Part shown: piece by piece, positions 41,711 through 64,000 of the stretch | Layout: every line of letters begins with the position of its first letter | Numbering within the stretch: the stretch's first letter is position 1 | Origin: Macrostomum lignano | Taxonomy: Eukaryota | Assembly (NCBI GenBank): GCA_002269645.1 | Contig: NIVC01002426.1 | Span: 124,001-188,000 of the forward strand | DNA: 64,000 nucleotides | Direction: 5' to 3' | Program-made: the position numbers and the translations under genes | Notes under the pieces: model-generated | Told to the model about the DNA's origin: nothing | Databases searched by the model: none | The model's input: only the letters and a program-made list of their open reading frames with translations

Positions 41711-41760
41711 TATCTATAAACATCGCCCCTAAACGAAGCAACAATCGGACGAACTCGCAG

Positions 41761-43862: not shown

Positions 43863-44219
43863 GTATGGCCACTCAGCATGGCCACTGCCACAATCAATGG
43901 AATTTAACAAAGGCCAATTACAAGTCCTTATCAGATACAGATTAGAAGCAAGCAATAAACGACGCTTCAATGTACAAGAGTTAATCTTATATTAATTCTA
44001 GCAAAACACTTAATGATGCACTTATGAATTAACTACATAAAGACATCAATTATAGATAGAAAGCTGCTTAAAATTTTAACGTATCCGCCACAGAAGAAAC
44101 AATTAACGGAGAGATCAAGGAGTCAGTTGGGGCATCTGAAAACACACACTGATAAGAGATGAATTGCACATCGAATTACAGGCCGTTACAGAAAACAAGC
44201 ACGCTATCAGGTCAGTGAG

Positions 44220-44552: not shown

Positions 44553-44637
44553 CTGAACAAATCGGAATTGCAAAATTCAAATGCAGCTACTGAGAGTAGA
44601 GTCAGAGTTTGCTACTAAAATTGTCTGCCGGTGATTT

Positions 44638-45045
44638 TCGGGGGCGCCTGCTACAATGGGTTGCGCCATCTACAGAGGGAGGCGCCAGCTACAGAGGGAG
44701 GCGCCAGCTACAGAGAGAGGCGCCAGCTACAGAGGGGGCGCCAGCTACAGAGGGAGGCGCCAGCTACAGAGAGAGGCGCCAGCTACAGAGGGGCGCCAGC
44801 TACAGAGAGAGGCGCCATCTACAGAGGGGCGCCAGCTACAGAGGGGCGCCAGCTATAGAGGGGCGCCAGCTACAGAGGGGCGCCAGCTACAGAGAGAGGC
44901 GCCATCTACAGAGGGGCGCCAGCTACAGAGGGAGGCGCCAGCTACAGAGGGAGGCGCCATCTACAGAGGGGCGCCAGCTACAGAGGAGGCGCCAGCTACA
45001 GAGGGGGGCGCCAGCTACAGAGGCAAGAGTTCAGCGCCCTATAAA
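44638..45045. repeat. 19-20-bp GC-rich intronic minisatellite (ggcgccagctacagaggg)n
   Basis: Direct reading. Confidence 0.95.
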
Positions 45046-45086
45046 AGGCGGATTAAATACCTTAGCGCAAAAACAATGCCTCTCAC

Positions 45087-45290
45087 CTGCAGCTCAGACC
45101 AGGGAATATACGGCACCTGGGCGCTGCCTCTACCCTCAACTTTGACCCAGCAGCCCAGATGCAGGGCGCAGCGATGCAGGGTGTCAATCCGATGAGGCGG
45201 CAGATGATGCTGGGTGTAAAATAGGAAAGCAGAAGCCACAGTGACGGCTACGTGAACACCGCAGAACCAGGGCTCCAGGTAGATTGTGTT
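45087..45290 (-). CDS. TMEM39: TMEM39 exon 5
   Basis: cgcAG|AAC...CAG|GTGAGA, phase 0-0. LHRCALHLGCWVK (cf. LHKSAAHLGKWQK). Confidence 0.93.
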
Positions 45291-46984: not shown

Positions 46985-47650
<666 letters not shown>

Positions 47651-47885
47651 TATCAACGTGGAATATTTATTAAAACATATATAATATAATATAATATATA
47701 CAAACAATATATAATATATGTACAATAAAATGCCTAATAATAATGAATTTAAAGCATTCGCAACCAAAACCTATGAATGCAACAAACCAAATAAACAGCA
47801 GTAATGGATGAACTTACAGAATACCGGATTCTACTACCGTTGGCGGATAATTAAACGGTAAACCAAAGCCAGTGAAGCAACTCAC

Positions 47886-48222
47886 CTGCACAAACAGCAG
47901 CGGCACAAAGGCCGAATGAAACGAGCTGAACAGGGTAGAGAACAGTATAATCTTCAATCGGCCATTGAAATCCGATTTCAATGCTTCGGTTTCGTCGCGG
48001 ATTTTCTCCGGATCGCGAGAACAGCTGTGCCTGGGGCTGAAGCTGCCCTGGCCTGGGCTGCCCTGGCCATTGGCGGCGGATGCTGAGCTTGATGTGGCAC
48101 CAGAAGCTGTGGCTGAGGACTTTTGATGCTGCGGAGTTGACCCACCGCCGCCGCTGAGCCAGTTACGGCTCAGCAAAGTGCCAGGCACGTGACCATAAAA
48201 GACCAGAGCGTAAGTGATGCAG
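47886..48222 (-). CDS. TMEM39: TMEM39 exon 4
   Basis: tgcAG|C...CAG|GTGAGT, phase 2-0. RHSCSRDPEKIRDETEALKSDFNGRLKIILFSTLFS...AFVPLLFVQ. Confidence 0.94.
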
Positions 48223-48441
48223 CTGCAAGATAAACCGGGTGGCCAAGGTTTATTAGTTAAAATATACTCATTAAACCTCCCATAGCACAGCTAGGTTTCT
48301 AGAAATATGCTTAGCAGCTTAGTCTGATTAGTGAAGTACTTGTATGTACATCTGTGCATTGCTTGATAACATTATATTAGTACTACTACTGTACTACTAT
48401 TACCAATATTAATACTACCTACTACTACAATCATAACAACA

Positions 48442-48485
<44 letters not shown>

Positions 48486-48574
48486 AACTAACTACTACTA
48501 CTACTACTATTACTACTACTTACTACTACTACTACTACAACTAACTACTACTACTACTACTACTATTATTATTA

Positions 48575-49865
48575 TTGTTGTTAAACGAGGGTGGGAAGCA
48601 TTGCTACCCGCGGATCAGCCCGGGGTGGGCTCTGCCGCAGAGGGGCACTACCAGGGGCCAAGGCATTAGCTGTCCAGGGCCCGAGATACCCCATGGATGC
48701 ATTGGGATTGGACCCGGCTCAAAGCGCGGGTGGGCGAGTTGACCCAAGCCTACGGTACAAGACACCGCCAACCCAAACAGTGGAATCAGGGACGGTACTA
48801 GGACCGAGTCCACCCAGGCCACCCTCCAGCAGACAAGTCCTTAGGAGTGCGCGAAAAACAGAATTGGAATAATTACTGAAAAGCCGTCCAAGAGCGGGGA
48901 AACCCCAGAAGTCTTGGAAAGGGCTAACTATTGGAGAGAGTCTGGGCAGCTACTAACCAAGGCGATCCTCACTGGGCTCTCGAGCCTCAAGGCTTCTTCA
49001 CTACCCAGCTCTACTTTGGAGTGAGTCTGGAAGGCTTGTATCCGAGGGGGAGACTCTAGGCGAGGCCAGGACTCCAACGCCTTTATTGCTACCAACCCAA
49101 GGGCATCGCCTATCCAGCTCAATATTGGGGGCCAGGCCAAGGGGGCGGGAAGAGGCACCAGGGGCAAGAGAACACCGGACTCAGCCGGTTGTCCCCGGTT
49201 CGGGACGAACATCCTTCCCAGGACACCAATCCGCTGTCAGGATGAGAGCCAGAGACACGCAAGCAGGGACCTTCAGCAGGAGCCAGGAGATGGACCCGAG
49301 GACAGGGCAAGATGGACCGGGCAAGGGCAGAGCTCATAACTCCGAATATTGGAAGGCTTCTAGTGGCCAGATAAAAGATTAAAAGAATAAAAAGCCACAA
49401 AGGCACAAAGCTAAAGGGATAAAACCGCGCTGGGATGCCAGCCCAGAAAAAAAGAATGGCAGAAAGGAGGAGCACCATAGCCCTAAAGCAGGCAGCTTGC
49501 CGACCTGCAGCCCGGGTGCTCAGCCTCAGGGCTGGCAGTCTACTGGGTCTACCGTACACCTTTGACGTCCTTTGTGAATTGGTCATTTTCTTTCCTGCAG
49601 GGCGGGTACGACCGGGGGGCTCAGTCCCGTCCTAGCCACACTGCAGTCCAGATATCCAACTCACTCCGGGCACCCCCCCCCCTAACCCAGGGCCGATGGC
49701 CAAAATTATTGGAGTACGAAAAAAGAATAGGGTTATTTTTAGAATGGGCACAGCCCCTCCGGGGCGGACCCTTAGTTATTGGGCTAGCCGAAGCTAGGCC
49801 AATCGGATTGCGCACAACCCTTAGACAAGCTACCAGAGAGGCAACCAGGGTAAAAACAGTCAGAG
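48575..49865. mobile_element. ~1.29-kb GC-rich, apparently non-coding insertion (retroposon-like) inside an (ACT)n/(ATT)n microsatellite
   Basis: Abrupt composition change. Identical actattattatta on both sides (48562-48574, 49866-49878). No TIRs and no recognisable ORF. Confidence 0.55.
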
Positions 49866-49991
49866 ACTATTATTATTACAACTACTATTACAACTACTAC
49901 TAATTACTACTATTTCTACTACTACTACTACTACTACTATTTCTACTACTTCTACTACTTCTGCTACTAAGATGCGACTACTAAAGCTCAC

Positions 49992-50224
49992 GGATAAACC
50001 AGCAGTATGCAGTAGAGCAGCGAGGTCCTGCAGTACACAAAGTAGCTCATCCAGCAGAAAAGCGCCGCCCAACAACAAGACAGCGCGCATAGCAGGGCCA
50101 GACAGGCAGTGAAGCAGCATCTGTTAGGGATGTTTCTAAGCTGCCGGAACAGAGTTAGCAGCAGCGGCAGGCACAGCATTGAGACCAGGTACCCGACCAG
50201 CTTGTAGTCGATAAGACGAAAATT
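49992..50224 (-). CDS. TMEM39: TMEM39 exon 3
   Basis: ctacAG|AAT...CC|GTGAGC, phase 0-2. NFRLIDY...LLYCILLVYP (cf. NFHLIDY...LLFLGYP). Confidence 0.92.
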
Positions 50225-50367
50225 CTGTAGAGGGGGTTTGACAGGTTAACCGCAAGTTTTGCAATCAAATTTATCTACCATGGTTTCTTGCACATTTGCA
50301 CATTAATTGTACTTTTGTAATGCAGATAGAACATGCCGACAAAGAAGGGCACCCAACACCCAAGAGA

Positions 50368-51105
50368 CAGGGGCGCCCACCTAAGAGACAGGGGCGCCCA
50401 CCTGAGAGGACAGGGGCGCCCATCTGAGAGACAGGGGCGCCATCTAAGAGACAGGAGCGCCCACCTAAGAGGACAGGAGCGCCCACCTAAGAAGACAGGA
50501 GCGCCCACCTAAGAGGACAGGAGCGCCCACCTGAGAGGACAGGGGCGCCATCTAAGAGACAGGAGCGCCCACCTAAGAGGACAGGAGCGCCCACCTAAGA
50601 AGACAGGAGCGCCCACCTAAGAGGACAGGAGCGCCCACCTGAGAGGACAGGAGCGCCCACCTGAGAGGACAGGAGCGCCCACCTGAGAGGACAGGAGCGC
50701 CCACCTGAGAGGACAGGGGCGCCCATCTGAGAGACAGGGGCGCCATCTAAGAGACAGGAGCGCCCACCTAAGAGGACAGGAGCGCCCACCTAAGAGGACA
50801 GGAGCGCCCACCTAAGAAGACAGGAGCGCCCACCTAAGAGGACAGGAGCGCCCACCTAAGAAGACAGGAGCGCCCACCTAAGAAGACAGGAGCGCCCACC
50901 TAAGAGGACAGGAGCGCCCACCTGAGAGGACAGGAGCGCCCACCTGAGAGGACAGGAGCGCCCACCTGAGAGGACAGGAGCGCCCACCTGAGAGGACAGG
51001 AGCGCCCACCTGAGAGACAGGCGCGCCCACCTGAGAGACAGGGGTGCCGTGCCAATTTAAGAGAGAGGGGTGCCCTCCTGAGAGACAGGGGCGCCCACCT
51101 GAGAG
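50368..51105. repeat. 23-24-bp intronic minisatellite (gacaggagcgcccacctaagag)n
   Basis: Direct reading. Confidence 0.95.
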
Positions 51106-51165
51106 ACAGCCAGGTGGATAACGAGGCAGTGATAAAAAAGGAACAAAACTACATAATGTACTTAC

Positions 51166-51385
51166 AATGGCATACTGATGATGCGAATTAGGCAGCCACC
51201 AGGTTGTCTTGTACAGGTGAATGTACTGCAGTGACATACAGCTGAAGCTGAAGAAGAGCATAAAAACTGAAAATGACAGCTCACTATCAGCTGGAATATG
51301 AGGAATCCTGGCGTGCTTCGGCTGCACCAGCAAAGTTGCTGAGCTGGCTGACTGGTTGCTATGAGGCGAATTGTCATCTCCGGCA
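51166..51385 (-). CDS. TMEM39: TMEM39 exon 2
   Basis: actcAG|T...ATT|GTAAGT, phase 2-0. KHARIPHIPADSELSF...LQYIHLYKTTWWLP (cf. IQYINIYKTVWWYP). Confidence 0.92.
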
Positions 51386-53895
51386 CTGAGTGGAATTGGT
51401 TGTTCATATTTATGCACATGATTTTAATTTTTTTAATTTTTAATTTTAATTTTTGTTTGTAGTTAATTTCTTTTGTAGAGTAACACATAGTTTATCTGGA
51501 CTTTTTTTTCCAAATATTTAAAAACAGACAAAGTGATTAGTTTCAAGATTTAAGGCCCTAGACAAAGTAAGTTATAAAACTTGCTAGAAAACAGCTCATT
51601 TGCTAAATGCTTATATAAGGCTTGAAAAGAGTTTTTAAGATGCCAAGGCTGAAAGGAGATACTGATATCTTAGGCTAAATAGCTGGCTTTCTACAAATTT
51701 CTACAAATAAGAAGTCTGACAATAGTGACAGTAAAATGCTTTCTATATAATTTTATCTTTTTTTCTTAAAAAGAAAAAAACCCAATCTAGAAGGTTATAA
51801 GATAGCTTTTTCCAATACTTTAGTTATCTAGAAATGGATCTAGATATAGAATATAACTAATAGATGCATTTTGGTACAATTTATCAACATCTAATACTAT
51901 AATATTTATAAATTCGAACATTTTAGCATATAGTCAGTTAAGTAAAGGACAACTTAAAATATCATTCTGCTTGAATTTATTTAACATTTAGGCCCCTATT
52001 GCAGTCAATGGCCATTATTGCAGCATGGATTTCCCTTTAATGGGAATTCCCTTTAATGTTGGTATAGGGCCATAGTTTAGAATACACTGAATGTATGCCA
52101 GACTAAAATCTTGCAGTTTATTTGGTATGTAACAGGGTTTATTCCTCTGTCTTTATGAACAATCCCACCGCTGGTACCAAAGTTGTAATAGTGGTTATTG
52201 TTCTCTCTAGTAAATCCTATCACTAAGTCACCAAGTTGTTACAGGCGTTTTGGCTCTCTATGAAATTATCCCACTGCTGCAACCAAGTTGTCAAAGGGCT
52301 GATTCTTCTGTCTCTTCAGATGATTCCACAGCTATCACTAAAGTTGTCAGAAGGCTAAACTCCTGTTTTTATAAATGTTGGTAGCTGCCACCAAGACTAT
52401 TCTATTAATAAATTATGAGTTTATTAATCTTAGAATAAGTCTGAGAATATTTATTAGAATAGGTCTGAGTATTTAGTCTGAGTATTATTCTTAGAAAACT
52501 ATTAGCCCTGAAAGATTTTACTCCTCTGTTATTCTGGTAGCGTTCTATTTAATAATTTGGCCTGAGCAGTATTTTGGCTTACTGGTATATGTATTCTATG
52601 TACTTTGCAAGTCCTTGGGCGTTACCAAGATCAGAGGGTCAGCCTCCGGTTATGTATTGACTTCGGATCTACTTTGTATCCTCTTATTACTTCCACTTCT
52701 TAGTAATATATACTGTATATGCTTTGGTCTACTTCACTCTTACTTTGTGAAAGGAATTAATGCAGAAAACACTTCTTCAATTCTTATTTTCTCGGAACTT
52801 TTACTATTCGTTATCAACTATTTTGTTAGTGAACCTCGGTGCACAAGGTTGTCTTCTCCTCTGCTGAAATTGCTTCTATTTATACTAAAATTTGCTACAG
52901 TTTTAAACAAAAATTTGTTAGTGCAAAATATTATAGAAAATACAAGTATTAAAACAAAATATGTTTCTTAGTTTTGGCGTGAATTCAAATTGACTACATG
53001 GTGACTATTTTATAAAGAAATCGGGAGGGGCCCTGCACAGGTATGCCAGTGTATGCCAAATTTTTCCAACCCAGAAAAAATGAGGCTCATTACAAGCTTC
53101 ATTTGTGATGTTGCAATGCACCAAAATACCTTTTTTTGCTTTTTTGTTTCACTTTTTTGCTTTTTTTGCTGATATTCTTTATAGCAGGAAGTCAATACAT
53201 GCCAAGATTTCTTTCATTCTTTCAAAGTAATTACTTTCCTTTTAAAATTTACTTTTATTTCACAATTTGATTCTGCAACTACAGGAACATGTACGTCACT
53301 TTTTCACTATCCATTTTTATATGCTAGATAGTATGCCAGATTTCAAAAAAAAAATTTGTACACCAAGTGTATGCCAAAAGTCCTGAGTGTAGGCAGGCGT
53401 ATGCCAGCGAGATTAATCCGGCGTACTACCCCTCTTCTGGACTTTGGGTATAGGACGCTTTTTAATTTCTTTTTTAAATTTATATTAAATATAATTTGTA
53501 AAAACTATACAATGAAAACTAATTATGCATTAATAATTTTATGGCTATAATTTTATGGGCTCATAAGTATAAACAGATACCTGTTAATAGTTTTAGAAAA
53601 TGGTTAGCCTAATTAATAGATAAACAATTTATATATGACTATGAGCATTAACATATGGTCTTACTAGCACTAGGCATTATATTTTTAACTCAAGTTTAAA
53701 CACCATTAGCATCAGTAAAAGTTTCCCTTGTCTAAATCAGCTTTTTTATCAGCTTGACTACAAAAGCATTTTTGCATTTGCTCAATGAGTCTACAAGATT
53801 AAGTCTATAGTCAACTTCTCTAAAATGACAAAAATAGTTTATTACAAAAAAATTGTAACGAGCTCTGGACATAGCAGTTTTTTACCAATACTTAC

Positions 53896-53942
53896 ACGTA
53901 TGAATGTGATATGCGCGATATATTGCGTTTTATCGCAGGCAT
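53896..53942 (-). CDS. TMEM39: TMEM39 exon 1 (not in the ORF track)
   Basis: ATG CCT GCG ATA AAA CGC... (MPAIKRNISRISHSY) ending GT|GTAAGT, phase 2, compatible with exon 2. The six exons sum to 1374 nt = 457 aa + stop. Confidence 0.75.
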
Positions 53943-55436
53943 CGTCTGTTTGACCAAGACAATAAAATTAAGAAACTCCTGAGTCCTGAAACTATTAATG
54001 TACAAGTACAACAAAGTAGTAGTCACAACCACTAGTTAGATTTATTTTATATTAAGTCTTGACAAAGTCGCAAAAGTACAACATAACTAGGAGGTACAAT
54101 GCTGAAACTCAGACAAAGTAATAGAGTTTTTGCTAGCTATTATTTATTTATTGATTATTGTTTTTTATTTTAGGCACTAAGATATCGAAATTGATTGTTC
54201 TTAGAAACATCGAACTTAAATTGCTGCTTCCGACAATTTATAAAAATTAGTGCATATCTAAACAAAAAATAAATTAATAACACACATGGTATACATAAAA
54301 CATATTAAAAGCAAAAGTTTTTTTAACGGCGTAAAAGTTTATCTCTCTTGACCGAAAAAATGCTATACGCTTTTATGCGAGTGTATGTCTGACATTTAAG
54401 AGCCCGATCCCCGATGTGCCTGAGAACTGTATGGAAAATTTATATTGCGCCAGTCTGGAATCAAGTATTTTAGTAGTTTTTAACAAATAAATAATGCAGT
54501 GGCAAACAGAATTAGCTACACAGAAATGACGTTAAGAGTTATTGATGTTCAAATCTGTCTGAAAGTATGACAGGTAAAAGTCAATTACCGTAACAAGGAA
54601 AAATCAAGGACTTCTAGACTAGTCTAGAAGTCCTTGGGAAAAATGAAATCAATAATCAAACACGCTATAATTTGTTAGTCGTACCAATTCGAGAATGTAT
54701 ACTTGGTCACATAACTCTAATGCATGCTGGACTTAGTGTATTTTTGAGTCGCACAAACAATTAAGTTAAATTTAAAAAAGCTAAATAAGGATCACGAGCT
54801 AGTTACGATAAACCTTGCAGAAGTTAGCTGCTAAGAAAACAAAAGAGGGGTACCTATAAATACTTACTCAGGTAAACGGGAAAACAATTATTAATCAATA
54901 ATTGCAGAGAAGCTAACAAAAAACAGGCAAGATTGTGCAAATTAGTAATATCTAAGGGCAAAGTGCACAGAAGCATGCAGTTAGAAAGCAAAGAAAGCAG
55001 ATAAAGTGGATGATAAGTGAGGAAATAAATAAGCAAGCAGTTATTTAGCATTATATTTGAACAATATTACAAATTACAACAGCAAAGTAAGTGGGGAAAT
55101 AAAACAACAAATTGCTATTTGCAGAAACAGAAATGAGATATAGATAAAAACATGAACTATTTGTTCAAAAAAGTATTGGGCCAACAATTAAAGCGGTGTA
55201 TTTTAATGTTGATTGGCTTAAATAAAATATTACCATTAAAAACCAAATATTGAAAGAATCAAGTAGAAAACGCTAACTCTGCAATAGGCAGACTATGGAA
55301 AAAGTTCCACTGACAAAATTTATTCTCAGACTTGGAATTTGAAGAAAAACTGTGTTGATAAATTAAACAAAGTTTATTACATTATTCGCCTACTAACAGT
55401 AGGCTAATCGTGACATCTTACAAATCAGATTAGAGT

Positions 55437-56187
55437 GAGACAGAGATAGACCAGACTGAGACAGAGATAGACCAGACTGAGACAGAGATAGACCAGACTG
55501 AGAGAGAGATAGACCAGACTGAGGCAGAGATAGACCAGACTGAGAGAGAGATAGACCAGACTGAGACAGAGATAGACCAGACTGAGAGAGAGATAGACCA
55601 GACTGAGACGGAGATAGACCAGACTGAGGCAGAGATAGACCAGACTGAGACGGAGATAGACCAGACTGAGGCAGAGATAGACCAGACTGAGACGGAGATA
55701 GACCAGACTGAGACGGAGATAGACCAGACTGAGACGGAGATAGACCAGACTGAGGCAGAGATAGACCAGACTGAGGCAGAGATAGACCAGACTGAGAGAG
55801 AGATAGACCAGACTGAGACAGAGATAGACCAGACTGAGAGAGAGATAGACCAGACTGAGACGGAGATAGACCAGACTGAGGCAGAGATAGACCAGACTGA
55901 GAGAGAGATAGACCAGACTGAGACAGAGATAGACCAGACTGAGAGAGAGATAGACCAGACTGAGACGGAGATAGACCAGACTGAGGCAGAGATAGACCAG
56001 ACTGAGACGGAGATAGACCAGACTGAGGCAGAGATAGACCAGACTGAGACGGAGATAGACCAGACTGAGACGGAGATAGACCAGACTGAGACGGAGATAG
56101 ACCAGACTGAGGCAGAGATAGACCAGACTGAGACGGAGATAGACCAGACTGAGACGGAGATAGACCAGACTGAGACGGAGATAGACA
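55437..56187. repeat. 21-bp minisatellite (gagatagaccagactgagaca)n
   Basis: Direct reading. Confidence 0.96.
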
Positions 56188-56204
56188 GGCCACAAAAATC
56201 TAAC

Positions 56205-56621
56205 CTAAGCCGCTGGGGCAGGACTAAACGGATCTAAAACGGGCGGCGGCGGCGGCGGCGGCGGTGGCGGAGGCGGCGGTCGCCTCGGTCGCTCGGCCCG
56301 AATCAGACTGACAATATGAGCAGTCCTGGGAGTGACAACTCCGTGACAGACAATCCGACGACCTGAGACCTCAATTTGGACAACGTGCGGCAGAGACTCC
56401 AGATATTGGCGCAGATTGGCGTATTGACCGCCGAAGCTCCAGTCTAGCGGTCGATGGCACAGTCGTAAATATTGCCGTTCAAGCGACGGCAGAGGGACAC
56501 CCCGTCGAGCTGATAACAGAACAGCCCTAAGTTGGCTCTCCTGTTCAAGGATACGAGCGTGCTGCTGCTGCCGTTCCGCGTCTGGAACTGGCGCCGCTTC
56601 CACTGCCGCCGCTTGAGCCAT
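56205..56621 (-). CDS. Small extended-LOTUS (OST-HTH) domain-only protein with a polyproline tail, about 138 aa
   Basis: LRAVLLSARRGVPLPSLERQYLRL...YANLRQYLESLPHVVQI...CHGVVTPRTAHIVSLIRAER matches the TDRD5/7 eLOTUS pattern. The 3' end may alternatively splice to a tiny exon near 55380-55395. Confidence 0.8.
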   Translation of the reverse strand: MAQAAAVEAAPVPDAERQQQHARILEQESQLRAVLLSARRGVPLPSLERQYLRLCHRPLDWSFGGQYANLRQYLESLPHVVQIEVSGRRIVCHGVVTPRTAHIVSLIRAERPRRPPPPPPPPPPPPPVLDPFSPAPAA

Positions 56622-56739
56622 GCAAAATATAGGCAATTTCACTTGCTATTAGGCATTTCACAGATTGGAAACTACTATAAGTAGAAAGAATGCGATGCGA
56701 AACTAACTATGATTACAACATTCAATGTTTGTGTGATGA

Positions 56740-57135
56740 GACTGACTGACTGACTGACTAACTGACTGACTGACTGACTGACTGACTGACTGACTGACTG
56801 ACTGACTGACTGACTGACTGACTGACTGACTGACTGACTGACTGACTGACTGACTGACTGACTGACTGACTGACTGACTGACTGACTGACTGACTGACTG
56901 ACTGACTGACTGACTGACTGACTGACTGACTGACTGACTGACTGACTGACTGACTGACTGACTGACTGACTGAGCGATTGAGTGAGAGGGTGAGCGATTG
57001 AGAGAGTGAGAGAATGAGTTAGTGAGCGAGAGTCGGTGAGTGAGTGAGCGAGAGTCGGTGAGTGAGTGAGCGAGAGTCGGTGAGTGAGTGAGTGAGAGTC
57101 GGTGAGTGAGTGAGCGACAGTCAGTGAGTGAGTGA
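56740..57135. repeat. (GACT)n followed by (GAGT)n-like microsatellites
   Basis: Direct reading. Confidence 0.96.
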
Positions 57136-57454
57136 TCAAATAAATGAGTGATAAGTAATTAAATAAACATTTTGAAATTTCTCAAACAGAAAAATAAACG
57201 CAAATGAAACACCACAGGAAATTTTATTTTTAGGAACTTTTTTCTAAAAATAAACTTATAAATCGACCTTTGCAACAGAAACTGGCAAAGATAATTATAG
57301 TTAGTAAATGCTTTATGCACACAAATTTGCACTACGCATGTACAATATTATGAAGGCGTCTTGGAGCAAATCAAATGAAATCGCATAATATTATTTTATC
57401 GAGAGTTGAATAAACCACTCGCTAGCCAATCAAAAAATTGCATATCTTATCAAA

Positions 57455-57985
57455 CTCTTTATCAGCCAATCAGAGAATCACAAATCTTATCTAACTTTCT
57501 TTATCAGCCAATTAGAGAATCGCATGTCTTATCTAACTTTCTACATCAGCCAATGAGAGAATCGCATGTCTTATCTAACTTTCTACATCAGCCAATCAGA
57601 GAATCGCATGTCTTATCTAACTTTCTACATCAGCCAATGAGAGAATCGCAAGTCTTATCTAACTTTCTACATCAGCCAATCAGAGAATCGCATGTCTTAT
57701 CTAACTTTCTACATCAGCCAATGAGAGAATCGCAAGTCTTATCTAACTTTCTACATCAGCCAATCAGAGAATCGCATGTCTTATCTAACTTTCTACATCA
57801 GCCAATCAGAGAATCGCATGTCTTATCTAACTTTCTTCATCAGCCAATCAGAAAATCGCATATCTTATCTAACTTTCTTCATCAGCCAATCAGAAAATCG
57901 CATATCTTATCTAACTTTCTTTATCAGCCAATCAGAGAATCGCATATCTCATCTAACTTTCTTCATCAGCCAATCAGAGAATCTC
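57455..57985. repeat. 42-bp minisatellite carrying AGCCAATCAG
   Basis: Unit agccaatcagagaatcgcatgtcttatctaactttctacatc, about 12 copies. Confidence 0.95.
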
Positions 57986-58047
57986 GTTATTTTTCCTTCA
58001 TCAGATGACTTTCAGGTCAAGTTGGTTTACTATGCTCAACTGTCTTC

Positions 58048-58819
58048 TCAATTGACCAGCTCAACCAATGGCAGCAAGCCGGCAGTCTCACTGCCTTTAG
58101 TCAGCAGCCGAAAATTCCTGGCCGGCAGCCAGCCGTCATCACTGGAACAGCCGCCAGTCAGCACCCTACTGACGCTGCGCCGCTGACACCTGACAAAACC
58201 GCAGGCTGGCGGCAAATTAGCCAATCGCAATCGAATGAAGCCAAGTTCGCGAGCCATTTGTTTTATTAAATCTTCGTTCGCCTGCCGCCTAGATAAGTGC
58301 AATATAAGGCGACACACAGGCGGCAGGCGAATCAGCTGATCTAGCTGGATTCGCTGACAGCTGCTGCTGCTGCTGTTGAATGGCCAGTCCATCAGCACAA
58401 TGTCGCCTAATTCAGCCGAATAGTCCACGTCTAGCAGTCGGCATCGAGCCAGACAGCCGTCCGCTTCAACTAGATAGATTTCGTCCGATAGAATGACATC
58501 GGCTTGGCAGCGAACTCGACAGTGAAGAGCCGGCTCGGCAGTCAGGCGATTCAGTAACTGCCCGGCTTCGTCCAGTGTCGACTCAATTGAGCGGCGAAGC
58601 TCGACGATCGGGATGGTTTCTATAGCAACAAGATCTTCGGCGGCGGCCTCGTCAGAGTTCAAGAGGCGATAGCGGGCGGTAAACTGTTGGCCAGAGCGAA
58701 GCACTGATAGGTTGATGAAGCTCGTCTCGATGAAGCCGGGAGTCTGCGGCGGCGGAGACGGCGGCATGAGCAGGTTTGGTTGCTGCTGCTGCGATGGATT
58801 TCTTCTGTAGATGTACGGC
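58048..58819 (-). CDS. TDRD5-like: LOTUS-Tudor (TDRD5/Tejas-like) gene, last exon: extended Tudor domain
   Basis: ctttgcAG|G, phase 2. FINLSVLRSGQQF...YLVEADGCLARCRLLDVD...IVLMDW...IQLDQLIRLPP...FIRLRLANLPP fits the eTudor layout. Confidence 0.7.
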
Positions 58820-58861
58820 CTGCAAAGGGCAGTGTGAAAATACAGGCGCAAAAATAGACAG

Positions 58862-58867
58862 ACACTA

Positions 58868-58908
<41 letters not shown>

Positions 58909-58911
58909 CTA

Positions 58912-58982
<71 letters not shown>

Positions 58983-59013
58983 CTAAAACAGACAGACAGA
59001 CAGACAGACAGAC

Positions 59014-59072
<59 letters not shown>

Positions 59073-59085
59073 CAGACAGACACTA

Positions 59086-59118
<33 letters not shown>

Positions 59119-59194
59119 CACAGACAGACAGACAGACAGACAAGACAGACAGACAGACACACACAGACAGACAAGAAAGACAGACAGACAGGCG

Positions 59195-59244
<50 letters not shown>

Positions 59245-59291
59245 AAGACAGACAGAAAGACAGACAGAAAGACAGACAGACAGACAGACAC

Positions 59292-59340
<49 letters not shown>
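58862..59340. repeat. (GACA)n intronic microsatellite
   Basis: Direct reading. Confidence 0.96.
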
Positions 59341-59350
59341 GGCAACTCAC

Positions 59351-59479
59351 GGCAGAGTTTGCAGCGACTCTCTGGCTGCTGCTGGTCGGGGCGGAGGCGG
59401 TGGATTTTGCGACAGCTTCGTCTTTTGAGACGGCGGCATGAGCGGCTTTGGTTGCTTCTGCTGTTGCTGGGATGGAATT
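59351..59479 (-). CDS. TDRD5-like: LOTUS-Tudor gene, duplicated Pro/Gln-rich middle exon (possibly optional)
   Basis: Donor CC|GTGAGT. Candidate acceptor ctacAG|A gives a 129-nt symmetric phase 2-2 exon. Confidence 0.5.
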
Positions 59480-59595
59480 CTGTAGATGTATGGGTTGCAA
59501 AGACCGGTTTGCAAATACACACTCTTGGAACGATACTTTGGCTTGAGGACAAATAAACAGATGGACAAACACACAAACAGACGCAGACAACTCAC

Positions 59596-60023
59596 GGTAG
59601 AGACTGTCTGGCTGCTGGTTGGGGCGGAGGCGGCGCATTTTGCGACACCTTTGCCTTCTGAGGCGGCGGCCGCCTAGAGACGGGAGCCGAGCCCGCGCCC
59701 CTGTTTCGCTTTCGCTTTTTATTAGACTTCTGCTTGTTGATCAGTTCCACAATAGCGCGAGAGGACTCCGTGACCACGCCGAAGCACCTGTAGCCGCCGC
59801 TGGACATTGGGTCCTGGCTGAGTCGGACCACATGCGGCAGGCCGGAAAGGTACTCCAGCAGAGTGCCCCGGCCTTGAAGGTCGAGCTGTTTTGAAGCCAG
59901 TACGCGATAATCTCTGAGCACTTCGCCAAGAGGCACGCCCTCCTTTGACGAGAGCAGCAGACAGCGGAGATTTACTTCTTGTTCTTCCTGGAATGCCAGC
60001 AGCGGTGACGATTTCCAGGGCAT
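59596..60023 (-). CDS. TDRD5-like: LOTUS-Tudor gene, first coding exon: extended LOTUS domain
   Basis: LRCLLLSSKEGVPLGEVLRDYRVL...TLLEYLSGLPHVVRL...CFGVVTESSRAIVELINKQK. Donor CC|GTGAGT. Confidence 0.85.
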
Positions 60024-60039
60024 CGACGAGCCACTGATG

Positions 60040-60310
60040 ACCTAAGGGGAACTGATGACCTACTAAGGATCTCAGGGTACTGATTACATACCTATGACCT
60101 AATTGATGACCTACTGATGAACTTAAGAGAAGCGATGACCCACTAATGACCTTAGGGGAATCGATGACCTATACTGATGACCTTAGGGGATTCGATGACC
60201 TATACTGATGACCTTAGGGGATTCGATGACCTATACTGATGACCTTAGGGGATTCGATGACCTATACTGATGACCATAGGGGATTCGATGACCTATACTG
60301 ATGACCTTTT
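60040..60310. repeat. 31-bp tandem repeat built on tgatgacct
   Basis: Unit ctatactgatgaccttaggggattcgatgac. It abuts the acceptor at 60034. Confidence 0.9.
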
Positions 60311-61986
60311 TAATTAGCTAATTCAATTAACGAAGGTCCAGATATAAAGCCAGAACCAACAAACTCGATATTTTGATTAAATTGCAAGACTTAAAAAAGA
60401 TTGAATAACAAATCAAACAGTACTTTTTCAAGTGTCAATATGTACTGTCGAGGTGAAAGAATTATACTTATAAATAAATATAAATATAGCCTATTTTGAT
60501 ATAACTGGTTTTAGAAAACGTTCATACTTACACTTAATAAGCATATGTATTGATTAAGGTGATAACTGTGTCCAAATAATATAAGTAAGTACAAAAGGAG
60601 CACATGTACTTTAAATATCTATTTTAGACTTTAGTACTACTACTACAGATATTATATAGAGCAATATATTAATATATAACACCATTTGATATATTTCCCA
60701 CTTTGAGTAGATCCATAAATATAGAAGTGTGCTATAAAAAGGTGCCATATAAAAGTGGATTAGAGCCAATTTGTTTACTTGTGGAAATAAATAAGTATAC
60801 ATAAGTAATATAGCATCAATCGGTTGGTGCAACGATTGGCACTGCACAGACATAAAAACAATAACCAATAGAAATAATTAATTAACAAATCTTTTACAAG
60901 TCTAAATTTTGATGGAATGTTATAAGAAATTAATAAATAACTATTATGTGCTATCTTCAATATTAGAAAACACATCTAATCTGACTACTAACAATCGGTT
61001 ATCAACGAGTAGTATGGAAAGAAAACTTACACGTCAAACAGTTATAAATTTATTATATTAGTAATATCATATTAGTATTAGAATTACCGAATAATAGTTT
61101 TTATTCACTAGAGTGTGCGAAGAACACAAAAAGTAAACACACAGACTACTATTAGTAGATTTCTAAAGGCGCAAATTTAAACTTAAGAATAATTAAATAA
61201 AGCAATAGCAAGTGGCAAATAAAACAAAAAGCGGCTACTAAGAAACAGAACTGATGAGAAATAAAATGAGAATAAAACAAACCATAAAGCCGGCTTCATC
61301 TTGGAATGCTTTTAGAAGCAATGTCAATCTTCTTCTTCAACACTACATTCGTGCGCATATTAATAAAACTTGTTTCCGAATATTAAAATTAAAAAATTAA
61401 CAAAGCATTTGTGCTGGATATCTTAACTGGCTACTGTGGAGAGTAGCCAGTGGCAAATATAACGTGAGTAAGTAGTGCTAAATATAAAAAAGATATTTGC
61501 TTTAGAAAAAAGCTTGGAATAAAGCGTGCAATGTGCGAAAAAAATAAAGAAATTACTACTGACAACAATTATAGTTGGTAGGTTGAAAAGAAAAAAATGT
61601 AATAAATGGTTATTATTTTAAGACATTTAAGCCAAAAAGGCCTATTAAAAACAGAAATATTGTGTAAATAAAATTTAAGACCAATGTCCTTATCACACGC
61701 AAAGAACAAAAGTGGGGAAAAGTGGAAAATCAATATCCAATTATTTAGTTTGTGTTTTGTGCCTATTGGTCCTAAACATTATCCAGCTAATAGAATGCTT
61801 TTAGAAACTCGTAGATTTTCTTTCCTTACATTTTTGAGAAACTCGCGTAGAAATATCCAAAACACTCCACTAATACTACTTTAGGGAACAAGTAGCTAAA
61901 TTTGCTTATATATTTTTCTAAACCATAAAAAACTCAGAACAAGTTCATATATCCTACTGCCAGAAACGGTGCAATAAGTAGTATTT

Positions 61987-62408
61987 TTATTTCATATTTT
62001 TCTTCAAAAACAGCGAAGAAACCGCGGCTCGATGCTGTTTGAGAACAGCCGCTCCGCCGTGCTTTTCCCATTCTCGATCAAACTCGGTGGCGGTCACTTC
62101 GGCGCCTTTCTTCTGTGGTAGGCCGGTCTCTTCTAGTCCCAGTTCGCACATGCTCATATCGTCCACTCCGGCCACTAAAAGGACGGCCGGCTGGCCAGGC
62201 TGAACCTCCATCTGGCGAGCGATCCATCGACCGTCGAAATGGGCCCACCAGAGCCCGCCAGAGTGTTGATCGGCCTCGGTGCCACGGTTCAATTCGTTCG
62301 GCCTGGCGAATGGGATTCGGAAATAGCGCTGCGACTTGGGGTCGCCCGGCTCACCAATGCGGCCAGCCAGTTGACGCTGGGCAGCTACCGCGCCCTCCAC
62401 TGTCACAG
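61987..62408 (-). CDS. Last exon of an uncharacterised gene; compact domain resembling small bacterial hypothetical proteins
   Basis: Strong acceptor ttttattttcttttccAG|CT, GC-rich open frame, stop overlapping AATAAA. Motifs YFRIPF...WWAHFDGRWIARQMEV...EVTATEFDREW. Confidence 0.75.
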
Positions 62409-63480
62409 CTGGAAAAGAAAATAAAATATCCGATATGTATCGAAAAACACTTTTAAATCAGTTTTTCTAATATCGCCGATATGTATCGAAAAACACTTTT
62501 TTAAGCTGGTTCTTATTTAAATCATCGAAGTTGACTACCTGGCGATATGTTGTGAAGGTAATTTAATACATAGCAATTATTTACGAATCTTTATTCCTTA
62601 TTGATTACTTATATTAATTGTAATAGAACGTTAAAAATAATATTTTAAATTTACTTGATTTTCAGATAATAATTTTGAATATTTCACGACACCAGGCAGC
62701 AGTAATAACCAAAGATAATTAAAAAATCTAGATAGACTAATTTGCCGATAGCAAAAATAGCTTTCCAGCCAATTAACCAAAAGCCTGATATTGAATAATC
62801 AAATTTTAATAGCCGTCACCAAATTTACAAAAGCGCGCAGGGAGCACAATCATCATGCAGCAGCCAATTTCAAGAAAACTTCACGAAAAAATAAGCCACT
62901 TCTCAACAACCGAATGCATTACAATGGCTATTTTTAGTAGTTTGAATTGTTTTTTCAAGACCGCTGCTGAACCGATAATAAAACAAAAGTTTTAGAAATA
63001 TTCTATAGTTAGAAAAAATTTAGAAATCGGCGTTCAAAACTACTCTAAGTAGCAGACAGAGGATGTGATTAGTGGAAAAAATAAGATCAGACAGAGATTA
63101 GAGATTTAGAGGCTTAAAAGGTGAGCGATTAGTAGAGAGAGGACGAAGCCGCACATAAAATGACTATAAATAATATTTATTCTCTGAAGATTAGTCAGTC
63201 AGCGGGATCGTGGAGAAAACCAACACAAACAATTTCATACAAGAAATTTGACCTTAAATATGTTTCAAATCATTACCTTTTTTCACGGCTGGTTTTGCTG
63301 CAAAAAGTTCAAAAAGCAAAAACAAAAGATAGTAAAACGGTAGATTTGATAATATTTCCTAGAGAAAAATAGCAAATTTTAACAGAAACTGAAAATTTAT
63401 GAACTGTTGAACTTTTCAACGTATTAATATAATGCTTAATGGTTAAGGCAACTTTATTCAACTTCAATTCTAGAGCTTAC

Positions 63481-63510
63481 CACAGCTATGCGGCTGCTGA
63501 GGCGACGTGT
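63481..63510 (-). CDS. 30-nt internal micro-exon of the same gene (phase 1-1)
   Basis: ttgttAG|acacgtcgcctcagcagccgcatagctgtg|GTAAGC, in frame with the 62408 exon (TSPQQPHSCAVTVEG). The upstream coding part was not located in the window. Confidence 0.55.
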
Positions 63511-63629
63511 CTAACAATTCATCAATTCAACCAATCAATAATACATAAGAGTGCGGTAAGAATGTTGAAAACAATTATATTAATATTAAATAGTTTAAAA
63601 ATAGAAACTAAGATTACCAATGGGATGCT

Positions 63630-63972
63630 AGCCTCAGAAACAAAGACCTTAACCGAGTGACACTAGCCTAAGAAACAAAGACCTTAACCGAGTGACACTA
63701 GCCTCAGAAACAAAGACCTTAACCGAGTGACACTAGCCTCAGAAACAAAGACCTTAACCGAGTGACACTAGCCTCAGAAACAAAGACCTTAACCGAGAGA
63801 CACTAGCCTCAGAAACAAAGACCTTAACAGGGAGACACTAGCCTCAGAAACAAAGACCTTAACCGAGAGACACTAGCCTCAGAAACAAAGACCTTAACCG
63901 AGAGACACTAGCCTCAGAAACAAAGACCTTAACCGAGAGACACTAGCCTCAGAAACAAAGACCTTAACAGGG
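63630..63972. repeat. 35-bp minisatellite (ctagcctcagaaacaaagaccttaaccgagtgaca)n
   Basis: Direct reading, about 10 copies. Confidence 0.95.
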
Positions 63973-64000
63973 TTGATGATTCAAGAAACAAAGAGGATCG

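What the first reader, a model, noticed from the sequence alone, without database searches (positions are those of the whole stretch)
56205..60033. Tandem germ-granule module: a LOTUS+Tudor gene followed by a stand-alone LOTUS-only paralog
Both genes carry an extended LOTUS domain (shared GVPL, YL..LPHVV.., C.GVVT motifs and the C-terminal helix). In Oskar/TDRD5/TDRD7 this domain binds and stimulates Vasa-type DEAD-box helicases. The downstream copy lacks Tudor and ends in about 14 consecutive prolines. A free eLOTUS micro-protein next to its parent could be a competitive or dominant-negative Vasa regulator, or a new condensate adaptor in stem-cell chromatoid bodies or germline. I know of no described equivalent pair.
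Basis: partly seen in the sequence, partly recalled or inferred. Interest (0 to 1): 0.75.

Follow-up and report, generated by a model that had tools for sequence, protein, structure and literature searches.

The report
Two neighbouring flatworm LOTUS-domain genes
In the flatworm Macrostomum lignano, an annotated gene with a Vasa-helicase-binding type LOTUS domain sits next to an unannotated 138-codon reading frame that encodes only such a domain plus a proline tail. The claimed Tudor domain could not be confirmed, and nothing here shows that the small gene is expressed.

Summary
The window is Macrostomum lignano scaffold NIVC01002426.1, 100% identical over 15,953 bp. Two LOTUS reading frames lie on the minus strand between myosin VI and Tmp39.

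Gene A (3 exons, 60023..58048, 442 aa) is the annotated hypothetical protein BOX15_Mlig011680g1. Gene B (56621..56205, 138 aa) is intact but absent from the annotations represented in the protein collection searched.

Both LOTUS domains fall just below Pfam's cut-off. A joint profile of the two hits only eLOTUS structures: TDRD7 at 8e-11, TDRD5 at 1.3e-8 and Oskar at 0.06. The alignments run through the C-terminal helix, both proteins keep the Vasa-interface positions, and a basic stretch follows the helix in each. A and B are each other's closest relatives (39% identity), which fits an old tandem duplication of exon 1.

The Tudor claim fails every test I ran: Pfam, PDB sequence search, 1.84 billion representative proteins, hhalign (0.3% probability) and shuffle tests (p about 0.04-0.07).

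Expression and selection on B cannot be judged here, because the three genome copies are nearly identical across the whole A-B block. AlphaFold without a deep alignment failed for both proteins.

Verdict: a real pair of LOTUS paralogues. A stand-alone eLOTUS protein is plausible but unproven. Interest is moderate.

The parts
58048..60023 (-). Gene A (BOX15_Mlig011680g1). CDS exons are 60023..59596, 59479..59351 and 58819..58048, giving 442 aa.
   Evidence: Both introns have a CC|GTGAGT donor. The acceptors are CATCTACAG (intron 1) and TTTGCAG (intron 2). The model is identical to P0003 over the 428 residues from QEVNL to the end. It is 97% identical to P0001.
59715..59990 (-). Gene A eLOTUS domain, residues about 12-103.
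   Evidence: Pfam OST-HTH 19.5 bits, E 8.8e-4. Aligns to TDRD5 3s93 residues 9-100 of 102 at E 1.7e-5, and to TDRD7. The residue equivalent to Oskar A162 is C21, and the one equivalent to L228 is I91.
59700..59735 (-). Basic tail after the last LOTUS helix of gene A (KQKSNKKRKRNR, residues 97-108).
   Evidence: Read directly from the translation. It corresponds to the basic disordered stretch that Tejas eLOTUS needs for Vasa stimulation (bioRxiv 10.64898/2026.03.28.715021).
58738..59699 (-). Pro/Gln-rich low-complexity linker of gene A, interrupted by two introns (59480..59595 and 58820..59350, the second mostly (AGAC)n). Exon 2 looks like a duplicate of the exon-1 end joined to the exon-3 start.
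58051..58737 (-). Gene A C-terminal region, 229 aa. It has no detectable homologue outside M. lignano.
   Evidence: No Pfam hit even at E<=10. No PDB hit. In 1.84e9 representative proteins only the M. lignano cluster itself and a spurious bacterial adhesin repeat were found. hhalign against 5 solved eTudor domains gave 0.33% probability. A custom HMM scored 0.5 bits, matched or beaten by 75 of 2000 shuffles. A semi-global profile alignment gave z=1.7.
59988..59993 (-). TTCCAG, a candidate spliced-leader acceptor inside the 5' end of gene A. It is in frame with the ATG that ends the M. lignano spliced leader.
   Evidence: Motif scan. The [T/C]TNCAG motif and the leader sequence come from PMC8629364. 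The annotated partial protein begins two codons downstream. This is an inference.
57424..57983 (+). 42-bp minisatellite of 13.4 copies. Each unit carries a CCAAT box and a GATA site. It lies between the gene A stop and the only AATAAA (57223..57228), so it is probably within the gene A 3'UTR.
   Evidence: 12 exact motif matches against 0 expected.
56205..56621 (-). Gene B, an unannotated single-exon ORF of 138 aa plus stop.
   Evidence: No internal stop in frame, against 4-6 stops in each of the other five frames. Not in the protein collection searched. No gene is called here in any of the three scaffold copies. The ORF is 417/417 nt identical in all copies.
56280..56546 (-). Gene B eLOTUS domain, residues about 26-114, including the short basic stretch RAERPRR.
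   Evidence: Pfam OST-HTH 22.4 bits. TDRD7 2lh9 at 2.3e-6, TDRD5 3s93 residues 13-97, Oskar 5a48/5nt7 to residues 101/104. A33 is equivalent to Oskar A162 and I103 to Oskar L228.
56241..56279 (-). Run of 13 prolines in gene B, encoded by an imperfect (CCG)n tract. It is followed by VLDPFSPAPAA and the stop.
   Evidence: The weak Pfam PRIMA1 hit is caused by this run.
56675..56690 (-). TTCTTTCTACTTATAG, a pyrimidine-rich candidate splice or trans-splice acceptor. The first exon base would lie 53 nt upstream of the gene B ATG.
   Evidence: This is an inference only.
55432..56186 (+). 21-bp minisatellite of 36 copies, immediately downstream of the gene B stop. The first AATAAA after B is at 55373..55378.

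Best explanation
This is a pair of paralogous eLOTUS genes in Macrostomum lignano, produced by an old tandem duplication of the LOTUS-encoding first exon.

Gene A is a transcript-supported protein resembling TDRD5/Tejas in layout. It has an N-terminal eLOTUS domain, a strongly basic tail, a Pro/Gln-rich disordered linker and a lineage-specific C-terminal region of 229 aa. That region cannot be shown to be a Tudor domain.

Gene B is an intact, unannotated 138-codon gene. It encodes only the eLOTUS domain, a short basic stretch (RAERPRR), 13 prolines and 11 further residues.

By analogy with Oskar, Tejas and Tapas, both LOTUS domains would dock on the C-terminal RecA domain of a Vasa-type DEAD-box helicase in its open state. 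Their basic tails would then speed RNA engagement. A would do this while tethered to a granule through its linker and C-terminal region. B has no anchoring part, so it would act as a diffusible cofactor or as a competitor for the same Vasa surface. B is most likely expressed either from the short spacer or as the downstream gene of a spliced-leader-resolved operon with A.

Shown here: the two ORFs, their LOTUS homology, the retained interface residues and their paralogy. Inferred: expression of B, Vasa binding, and any role in the germline or in neoblasts.
For: LOTUS identity. The A+B profile hits only eLOTUS structures: TDRD7 at 8e-11 and 1.3e-10, TDRD5 at 1.3e-8 over residues 13-100 of 102, and Oskar at 0.06. 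Pfam OST-HTH falls just under its cut-off.

eLOTUS features. The alignments extend through the C-terminal helix of TDRD5 and Oskar. The position equivalent to Oskar A162 is Ala in B and Cys in A. The position equivalent to L228 is Ile in both, as in TDRD5 and TDRD7. Basic residues follow the helix, as Vasa stimulation requires.

Paralogy. A and B are 39% identical over 92 aa (tblastn 55.8 bits; BLASTP E 2e-8). That is closer than either is to TDRD5 or TDRD7. They share LPHVV and GVVT, which TDRD5 and TDRD7 lack.

B looks maintained. Its frame is open for 145 codons while the other frames hold 4-6 stops. It scores better than the expressed gene A against both Pfam and PDB LOTUS domains. No closer paralogue exists among annotated proteins. 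In a substitution-only neutral simulation, only 1.4-6.9% of sequences stayed stop-free at this divergence.

Operon plausibility. The two genes are on the same strand. The A-stop to B-ATG spacer holds only 438 nt of non-repeat sequence. M. lignano operons are defined by a repeat-adjusted spacer under 1 kb (PMC8629364).
Against: B is absent from the annotations represented in the protein collection searched: the transcript-based NCBI annotation and the UniProt/UniRef entries. No expression data could be examined.

The three genome copies are too similar to test selection. B has 0 of 417 variable sites, but the non-coding spacer has 1 of 438. In addition, all 7 variable codons in gene A are nonsynonymous.

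The codon-usage frame test was inconclusive. AlphaFold2 without an alignment failed (pLDDT 52 and 36), so the fold and the last helix rest on sequence alignment only. The Pfam scores are below the gathering threshold. Gene A has Cys rather than Ala or Ser at the Oskar A162 position. B's basic stretch is short and runs into polyproline, so whether it would stimulate or merely bind cannot be predicted.
Confidence: 0.55

Rival explanations
1. Gene B is an untranscribed or non-functional relic. It would be a partial duplicate of an ancestral LOTUS exon whose reading frame happens to be still open, with no role of its own.
For: No gene model exists for B in any of the three scaffold copies or in the protein collection searched, although the NCBI annotation is transcriptome-based. 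The codon-usage test was inconclusive. B is flanked by micro- and minisatellites on both sides. Its identity among copies says nothing about selection, because the neighbouring non-coding DNA is equally invariant.
Against: The 145-codon frame is open while the other five frames hold 4-6 stops. The complete LOTUS domain scores better than that of the expressed paralogue. It has diverged 61% from its closest relative without a stop or frameshift; simulation leaves 1.4-6.9% stop-free even with indels ignored. The M. lignano authors state that transcript assemblies break in repeat-rich regions (PMC8629364), so a missing annotation is weak evidence.
Confidence: 0.3
2. B is not a separate gene but part of a longer transcript. 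It could be an alternative exon or the 3'UTR of gene A, or the upstream outron or 5' exon of the downstream Tmp39 gene. In that case no free LOTUS-only protein is made.
For: B is on the same strand as both neighbours. The only AATAAA between the A stop and the B ATG is at 57228, and a pyrimidine-rich AG acceptor lies 53 nt upstream of the B ATG. About 7% of M. lignano transcriptional units are polycistronic precursors (PMC5730564).
Against: Gene A's frame ends at a stop codon 1.4 kb upstream, and the annotated protein ends there too. B has its own ATG, and an in-frame TAG lies 24 nt upstream of it. Its LOTUS domain sits at the N-terminus, as in TDRD5, TDRD7 and gene A. The ORF ends in a stop, and no coding-like ORF follows in the 2.3 kb before Tmp39. 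A polycistronic precursor resolved by trans-splicing would still yield a separate B protein.
Confidence: 0.1
3. The LOTUS domains of A and B act mainly as binders of G-rich or G-quadruplex RNA, or as generic winged-helix modules, and not as Vasa regulators.
For: LOTUS domains of both subclasses bind G-quadruplex RNA in vitro (PMC7498356, listed; discussed). No Vasa interaction was tested here. Gene A has Cys at the Oskar A162 position.
Against: All PDB hits are to the Vasa-binding eLOTUS subclass, and the alignments include its defining C-terminal extension. The two interface positions defined by mutation, and the basic tail, are retained. The G-quadruplex surface is reported to lie opposite the Vasa surface, so the two activities are not exclusive.
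Confidence: 0.15

Closest known systems
TDRD5 / Drosophila Tejas (N-terminal eLOTUS plus a single extended Tudor domain)
   Same: Gene A has an N-terminal eLOTUS domain whose best PDB match is human TDRD5 (3s93, E 1.7e-5, aligned to residue 100 of 102). It has Ile at the Oskar L228 position, a strongly basic tail after the last helix, then a disordered linker and one C-terminal globular-looking region.
   Different: The C-terminal region gives no Tudor signal by Pfam, PDB search, hhalign or custom profiles. It has no homologue outside M. lignano. There are no additional mLOTUS domains. The Oskar A162 position holds Cys rather than Ser.
TDRD7 / Drosophila Tapas, N-terminal eLOTUS domain
   Same: Gene B's best matches are TDRD7 LOTUS structures (2lh9 at 2.3e-6, 3rco at 5.9e-6). 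Ala occupies the Oskar A162 position, as in TDRD7 and Oskar, and Ile occupies the L228 position.
   Different: B has no Tudor domains and no further LOTUS domains. It is 138 aa long and ends in 13 prolines plus 11 residues. It is closer to its neighbour A than to TDRD7.
Oskar eLOTUS domain (Vasa binder and stimulator; PDB 5NT7, 5A48)
   Same: B aligns to Oskar LOTUS through the C-terminal helix (E about 0.01). In vitro, the isolated Oskar, Tejas and Tapas eLOTUS domains are enough to bind Vasa and stimulate it (PMC5458760).
   Different: Sequence similarity is weak. Oskar couples LOTUS to an OSK domain and is restricted to insects. B has no second domain.
C. elegans MIP-1/EGGD-1 and MIP-2 (LOTUS proteins without Tudor) and LOTR-1 (LOTUS plus a divergent Tudor)
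   Same: MIP-1 and MIP-2 show that LOTUS proteins lacking Tudor can recruit and activate Vasa homologues (PMC8331183 and PMC12803171, abstracts). LOTR-1 shows that a Tudor domain next to LOTUS can be too divergent for plain sequence searches, and that cage aromatics can be replaced (PMC9200344).
   Different: [quoted passage not shown] B is a single domain with no obvious anchoring part. No homology beyond the LOTUS fold was tested.

Membership tests
LOTUS / OST-HTH domain (Pfam PF12872) | Match to the family profile at or above the curated cut-off | tested here: inconclusive
   A scores 19.5 bits and B 22.4 bits against a gathering score of 23.8. The E-values are 8.8e-4 and 1.1e-4.
LOTUS / OST-HTH domain (Pfam PF12872) | Significant sequence homology to solved LOTUS domains over the full domain length | tested here: met
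   The A+B profile hits TDRD7 at 8e-11 and 1.3e-10, TDRD5 at 1.3e-8 and Oskar at 0.06. No non-LOTUS hit appears at E<=1.
LOTUS / OST-HTH domain (Pfam PF12872) | Winged helix-turn-helix fold | tested here: inconclusive
   AlphaFold2 without an alignment gave pLDDT 52 for B and 36 for A. Foldseek on the B model returned only noise. No homologues were available to build an alignment.
Extended LOTUS (eLOTUS) subclass, Jeske et al. 2017 | C-terminal extension (alpha5 helix) after the minimal LOTUS core | tested here: met
   Met at the alignment level only. A aligns to TDRD5 3s93 residues 9-100 of 102. B aligns to 3s93 residues 13-97 and to Oskar 5a48 residues 20-101 of 104, covering the helix segments RAIVELINKQ and AHIVSLIRAE. 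The definition of the subclass is from PMC5458760.
Extended LOTUS (eLOTUS) subclass, Jeske et al. 2017 | Vasa-interface residues: a small residue at Oskar A162 and Leu or Ile at Oskar L228 | tested here: met
   B has A33 and I103, which fully conforms. A has C21, which is small but is neither Ala nor Ser, and I91.
Extended LOTUS (eLOTUS) subclass, Jeske et al. 2017 | Positively charged disordered stretch after alpha5, needed for Vasa stimulation | tested here: met
   A has KQKSNKKRKRNR, which is strong. B has RAERPRR followed by 13 prolines, which is short and may be weaker.
Extended LOTUS (eLOTUS) subclass, Jeske et al. 2017 | Binds the C-terminal RecA domain of Vasa and stimulates its ATPase | not testable with these tools
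   This needs recombinant proteins, or a confident complex model built from deep alignments.
Tudor / extended Tudor domain (Pfam PF00567), as in TDRD5 and Tejas | Match to Tudor profiles or to solved eTudor domains | tested here: not met
   No Pfam hit at E<=10, whether on the 174-aa region or the 66-aa core. No PDB hit. hhalign against 5 solved eTudor domains gave 0.33% probability. A custom HMM scored 0.5 bits, matched or beaten by 75 of 2000 shuffles. The semi-global profile gave z=1.7, reached by 21 of 300 shuffles. Sensitivity is limited because the query has effectively one sequence.
Tudor / extended Tudor domain (Pfam PF00567), as in TDRD5 and Tejas | Aromatic cage with the conserved Arg and Asp pair of the Tudor core | tested here: inconclusive
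   The only hhalign alignment pairs ADGCLARCRLL...IVLMDWPFN with EDDQWYRASVL...VGYVDYGNF. The Arg, the Asp and one aromatic residue coincide, and the other cage positions do not. The alignment is not significant, so this is only a lead.
Spliced-leader-resolved operon of M. lignano (Ustyantsev et al. 2021) | Adjacent same-strand genes with a repeat-adjusted spacer under 1 kb | tested here: met
   The A-stop to B-ATG spacer is 1426 nt. Of this, 438 nt are non-repeat and aligned across the copies. The criterion is from PMC8629364.
Spliced-leader-resolved operon of M. lignano (Ustyantsev et al. 2021) | The downstream gene carries the spliced leader | not testable with these tools
   No RNA reads were available. 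Only a candidate acceptor, TTCTTTCTACTTATAG, was found, with the first exon base 53 nt upstream of the ATG.

The most novel reading that the evidence does not exclude
Gene B is a naturally occurring free eLOTUS micro-protein. It would be co-expressed, possibly from one spliced-leader-resolved operon, with its granule-anchored paralogue A. It would either activate Vasa away from granules or titrate it from the anchored scaffold. That would make it a built-in diffusible regulator of a helicase whose activity is otherwise thought to be gated by where eLOTUS proteins sit in the cell.
Probability: 0.2. Interest if true: 0.6.

Novelty: new variant of a known kind. Interest (0 to 1): 0.38.

Why it matters
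eLOTUS domains are described as the only known activators of Vasa. Recent work proposes that Vasa is active only where an eLOTUS protein is anchored, in nuage, germ plasm or perinuclear granules. The eLOTUS proteins named in the papers read here (Oskar, TDRD5/Tejas, TDRD7/Tapas, MIP-1/2, LOTR-1) all join the domain to a scaffold or localisation part.

A stand-alone eLOTUS protein in a flatworm would be a natural test of that model. Does an unanchored eLOTUS switch Vasa on everywhere, or does it act as a decoy? Macrostomum lignano is a transgenesis-capable regeneration model (PMC5730564). From general knowledge, not checked here, RNAi works in this species and its stem cells and germline express vasa, so the question can be tested directly.

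If B turns out to be unexpressed, the finding shrinks to two smaller points: one more fast-evolving TDRD5-like gene, and an annotation gap in the Mlig_3_7 assembly.

Tried and rejected
1. Word-indexed homologue searches with full-length A, with B, and with a linker-deleted A+B alignment found only the M. lignano cluster itself. No alignment could therefore be built for structure prediction.

2. AlphaFold2 from single sequences gave pLDDT 36 for A and 52 for B. Foldseek on the B model returned noise. The structure route was dropped.

3. An exhaustive HMMER search with the A C-terminal region found only the M. lignano cluster and P0006. P0006 is a bacterial LapA/Calx-beta adhesin whose score comes from repeated 49-residue chance matches, so I rejected it.

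4. Tudor tests. Real eTudor sequences were pulled from the PDB using a consensus bait written from memory. I used only the returned PDB sequences. hhalign, a custom HMM with shuffles, a semi-global profile with shuffles, and relaxed Pfam scans were all non-significant. A by-eye collinear eTudor-like pattern is kept only as a lead.

5. Selection test across the three scaffold copies. B is invariant, but so is the neighbouring non-coding DNA, and all changes in A are nonsynonymous. No inference is possible.

6. A codon-usage frame test against about 1,475 reference codons from the window was inconclusive.

7. Literature searches found no paper that mentions Mlig029870 or Mlig011680. Searches combining LOTUS with flatworm terms listed no paper on LOTUS proteins in flatworms.

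8. No further coding exon, such as a Tudor exon belonging to B, lies in the 2.3 kb between B and Tmp39.

9. Rfam found no RNA family in the window.

Full report
**What the window is.** The window comes from a repeat-rich eukaryotic genome. Rfam finds no RNA family in it. A homologue search with the spliced gene A protein returned one cluster, hypothetical proteins of the flatworm Macrostomum lignano. Window 48048..64000 is 100.000% identical over 15,953 bp to scaffold NIVC01002426.1 of assembly Mlig_3_7 (GCA_002269645.1), read on the reverse strand. Two further scaffold copies, NIVC01001611.1 and NIVC01001575.1, are collinear with it. In all three copies the minus-strand gene order is myosin VI, gene A, gene B, Tmp39. 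The last myosin VI exon is at window 61987..62406 (Myosin-VI_CBD, E 1.2e-38).

**Gene A.** Three exons on the minus strand give a 442-aa protein: 60023..59596, 59479..59351 and 58819..58048. Both introns have a CC|GTGAGT donor. The acceptors are CATCTACAG and TTTGCAG. Over the 428 residues from QEVNL to the end, the model is identical to PAA57997.1 (BOX15_Mlig011680g1, annotated as partial). It is 97% identical to BOX15_Mlig029870g1 and g2 on the other scaffolds. The Mlig_3_7 annotation is built from transcripts (PMC5730564), so gene A and its splicing are supported by RNA evidence.

The layout of gene A is as follows:
- an N-terminal LOTUS domain, residues about 12-103;
- a basic tail, KQKSNKKRKRNR;
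- a Pro/Gln-rich linker of about 100 residues, built from duplicated units;
- a C-terminal region of 229 aa.

**Gene B.** This is a single ORF, 56621..56205, of 138 aa. The prolines come from an imperfect (CCG)n tract at 56242..56279. The frame is open for 145 codons, while each of the other five frames carries 4-6 stops.

No protein matching B exists in the 5.8-billion-cluster collection, which holds the NCBI and UniProt/UniRef M. lignano proteins. No gene is called at this position in any of the three scaffold copies. B is therefore unannotated there. The 2.3 kb between B and Tmp39 is AT-rich and contains no coding-like ORF, so B has no downstream Tudor exon.

**Are the LOTUS domains real?** Pfam OST-HTH matches both proteins just below its gathering score: A 19.5 bits, B 22.4 bits, cut-off 23.8. 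Against PDB sequences, A matches human TDRD5 LOTUS (3s93, E 1.7e-5, residues 9-100 of 102) and TDRD7. B matches TDRD7 LOTUS (2lh9 at 2.3e-6, 3rco at 5.9e-6), TDRD5 and Oskar (about 0.01).

A profile built from A and B together raises these scores: TDRD7 8e-11 and 1.3e-10, TDRD5 1.3e-8 over residues 13-100, Oskar 0.06. Nothing else is hit at E<=1. The domains are therefore real members of the TDRD5/TDRD7/Oskar LOTUS group.

**Are they the extended, Vasa-binding type?** Jeske et al. (PMC5458760) define eLOTUS by a C-terminal helix. They also identified two interface positions. Oskar A162 is a small residue, Ala in Oskar and TDRD7 and Ser in TDRD5. Oskar L228 is Leu in Oskar and Ile in TDRD5 and TDRD7.

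The alignments of A and B run through that helix (RAIVELINKQ in A, AHIVSLIRAE in B). B has Ala and Ile at the two positions. A has Cys and Ile.

A 2026 preprint from the same group shows that a basic disordered stretch just after the helix is needed for Vasa stimulation but not for binding. A has a strong version of this stretch. B has a short one that runs into polyproline. These features are met at the sequence level. The fold itself could not be checked, because no homologues were available for an alignment and single-sequence AlphaFold2 failed (pLDDT 36 and 52).

**Are A and B paralogues?** Yes. They are 39% identical over 92 aa (tblastn 55.8 bits; BLASTP E 2e-8). That is closer than either is to TDRD5 or TDRD7. 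They share residues that those proteins lack, including LPHVV and GVVT. B also mirrors exon 1 of A in layout: LOTUS, then a basic stretch, then a Pro-rich tail. The simplest history is an old tandem duplication of the LOTUS exon.

**Is there a Tudor domain in A?** I could not show one. The evidence is as follows:
- Pfam finds nothing, even at E<=10 on the region or on its putative core.
- A PDB sequence search finds nothing relevant.
- An exhaustive HMMER search of 1.84 billion representative proteins finds only the M. lignano cluster and a bacterial adhesin. The adhesin's score comes from repeated chance matches.
- I pulled five real extended Tudor sequences from the PDB (TDRD1 twice, Drosophila Tudor twice, TDRKH) and compared profiles. 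hhalign gave 0.33% probability. A custom HMM gave 0.5 bits, matched or beaten by 75 of 2000 shuffles. A semi-global profile alignment gave z=1.7, reached by 21 of 300 shuffles.

The single hhalign alignment does fall on the Tudor core: ADGCLARCRLL..IVLMDWPFN against EDDQWYRASVL..VGYVDYGNF. By eye, the flanks also resemble eTudor strands. C. elegans LOTR-1 shows that a Tudor domain next to LOTUS can be very divergent. This is a lead, not a result. On the evidence here, gene A has a TDRD5-like layout but fails the Tudor membership test.

**Is B under selection or expressed?** Neither could be decided. The B ORF is identical in all three copies (0 of 417 variable sites). However, the unique non-coding spacer between A and B is just as invariant (1 of 438), and the A exons vary by only 0.5-0.8%. 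The flanks vary more: 2.8% upstream, and 1.4% then 9% downstream. All 7 variable codons in A are nonsynonymous. The low diversity of the block therefore looks like recent homogenisation, not purifying selection.

Indirect arguments favour a maintained gene:
- the open frame;
- a LOTUS domain at least as well preserved as that of the expressed paralogue;
- no closer paralogue among annotated proteins;
- a substitution-only simulation in which only 1.4-6.9% of sequences stayed stop-free at this divergence.

A codon-usage frame test was inconclusive.

**How B could be expressed.** One AATAAA lies between the A stop and the B ATG, at 57228. The next one after B is at 55378, so each ORF is followed by a minisatellite and then a poly(A) signal about 0.8 kb downstream. 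The spacer from the A stop to the B ATG is 1426 nt, but only 438 nt of it are non-repeat.

In M. lignano, 30-39% of genes are trans-spliced and about 15% lie in operons. Operons are defined there by a repeat-adjusted spacer under 1 kb. The authors also note that transcript assemblies break in repeat-rich spacers (PMC5730564 and PMC8629364).

A TTCCAG acceptor lies 36 nt into the A ORF. It is in frame with the ATG that ends the spliced leader, and the annotated partial protein starts two codons after it. For B, the best candidate acceptor is TTCTTTCTACTTATAG, with the first exon base 53 nt upstream of the ATG. An A-B operon is therefore plausible but untested.

**Likely mechanism (inferred).** Both eLOTUS domains would bind the C-terminal RecA domain of a Vasa-type helicase in its open state and promote RNA engagement through their basic tails, as shown for Oskar, Tejas, Tapas, TDRD5 and EGGD-1. 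A carries a long disordered linker and a C-terminal region that could anchor it in granules. B carries nothing except a polyproline run, which might recruit profilin or proteins with SH3, WW or GYF domains (general knowledge, not tested here). B would therefore act as an unanchored activator or as a competitor. The sequence cannot tell which, because its basic stretch is short.

**Novelty and verdict.** Gene A is a new, lineage-specific member of the eLOTUS protein group. If B is expressed, it is a new architecture within that group, a stand-alone eLOTUS protein. I found no such protein described in the papers I read, though the search was not exhaustive. The Tudor label should be dropped unless deeper alignments rescue it. 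Interest is moderate. It would rise if public RNA-seq shows a separate B mRNA.

Noticed in passing
window 57424..57983: A 42-bp minisatellite of 13.4 copies. Every unit carries a textbook CCAAT box (AGCCAATCAGAG) and a GATA site (CTTATC). There are 12 exact motif matches against 0 expected. It lies between the gene A stop and the only AATAAA, so it is probably in the A 3'UTR, and it is 0.8-1.4 kb upstream of gene B. Copy number differs among the three scaffold copies.
   Followed up: partly
window 59351..59479 (gene A exon 2) with flanking introns: Exon 2 looks like a tandem duplicate of the exon-1 end joined to the exon-3 start. It has the same CC|GTGAGT donor and the same CATCTACAG acceptor context, and the peptide units are repeated ([20 protein letters not shown] resembles PPPQKAKVSQNAPPPPQPAA). 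Intron 2 (58820..59350) is almost entirely (AGAC)n.
   Followed up: partly
window 58048..60023 compared with L001 and L002: All 7 variable codons of gene A among the three genome copies are nonsynonymous and none is synonymous (W3R, Q70R, P158R, R191T, V225A, R313S, G428S). The numbers are too small for a test, but they fit relaxed or positive selection on this gene.
   Followed up: partly
window 56205..60104 compared with its flanks: The whole A-B block, including introns and the non-coding spacer, varies by only 0-0.8% among the three scaffold copies. The flanks vary by 2.8% upstream, and by 1.4% then 9% downstream. This could be a gene-conversion or recent-coalescence tract, or a constrained transcription unit.
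   Followed up: partly
window 59988..59993: A TTCCAG spliced-leader-type acceptor lies 36 nt inside the gene A ORF, in frame with the ATG that ends the M. lignano spliced leader. The annotated 'partial' protein starts two codons after it. The real N-terminus may therefore be M-EEQEVNL rather than MPWKSSPLLAFQ.
   Followed up: partly
window 1..64000 (for example 11534..12460, 15157..15821, 17634..18313, 43204..43995, 46930..47689, 55432..56186, 60105..60308): The window is packed with micro- and minisatellites that create long spurious ORFs in several frames. Most ORFs of 130 aa or more in the mechanical list are repeat artefacts.
   Followed up: no
window 6726..7697, 8368..9234, 21032..23378, 40065..42210: Other recognisable coding pieces are present: a rhodopsin-family GPCR exon, a Ras/Roc-type small GTPase with a long Ser/Pro/Gln-rich tail ending in a Cys-rich motif (CCCRLCW), SPRY plus LisH/CTLH exons (RanBP9/10-like), and Noc2 exons.
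   Followed up: partly
window 75..524 (minus strand): A 149-aa ORF at the window edge has no Pfam hit. I did not pursue it.
   Followed up: no
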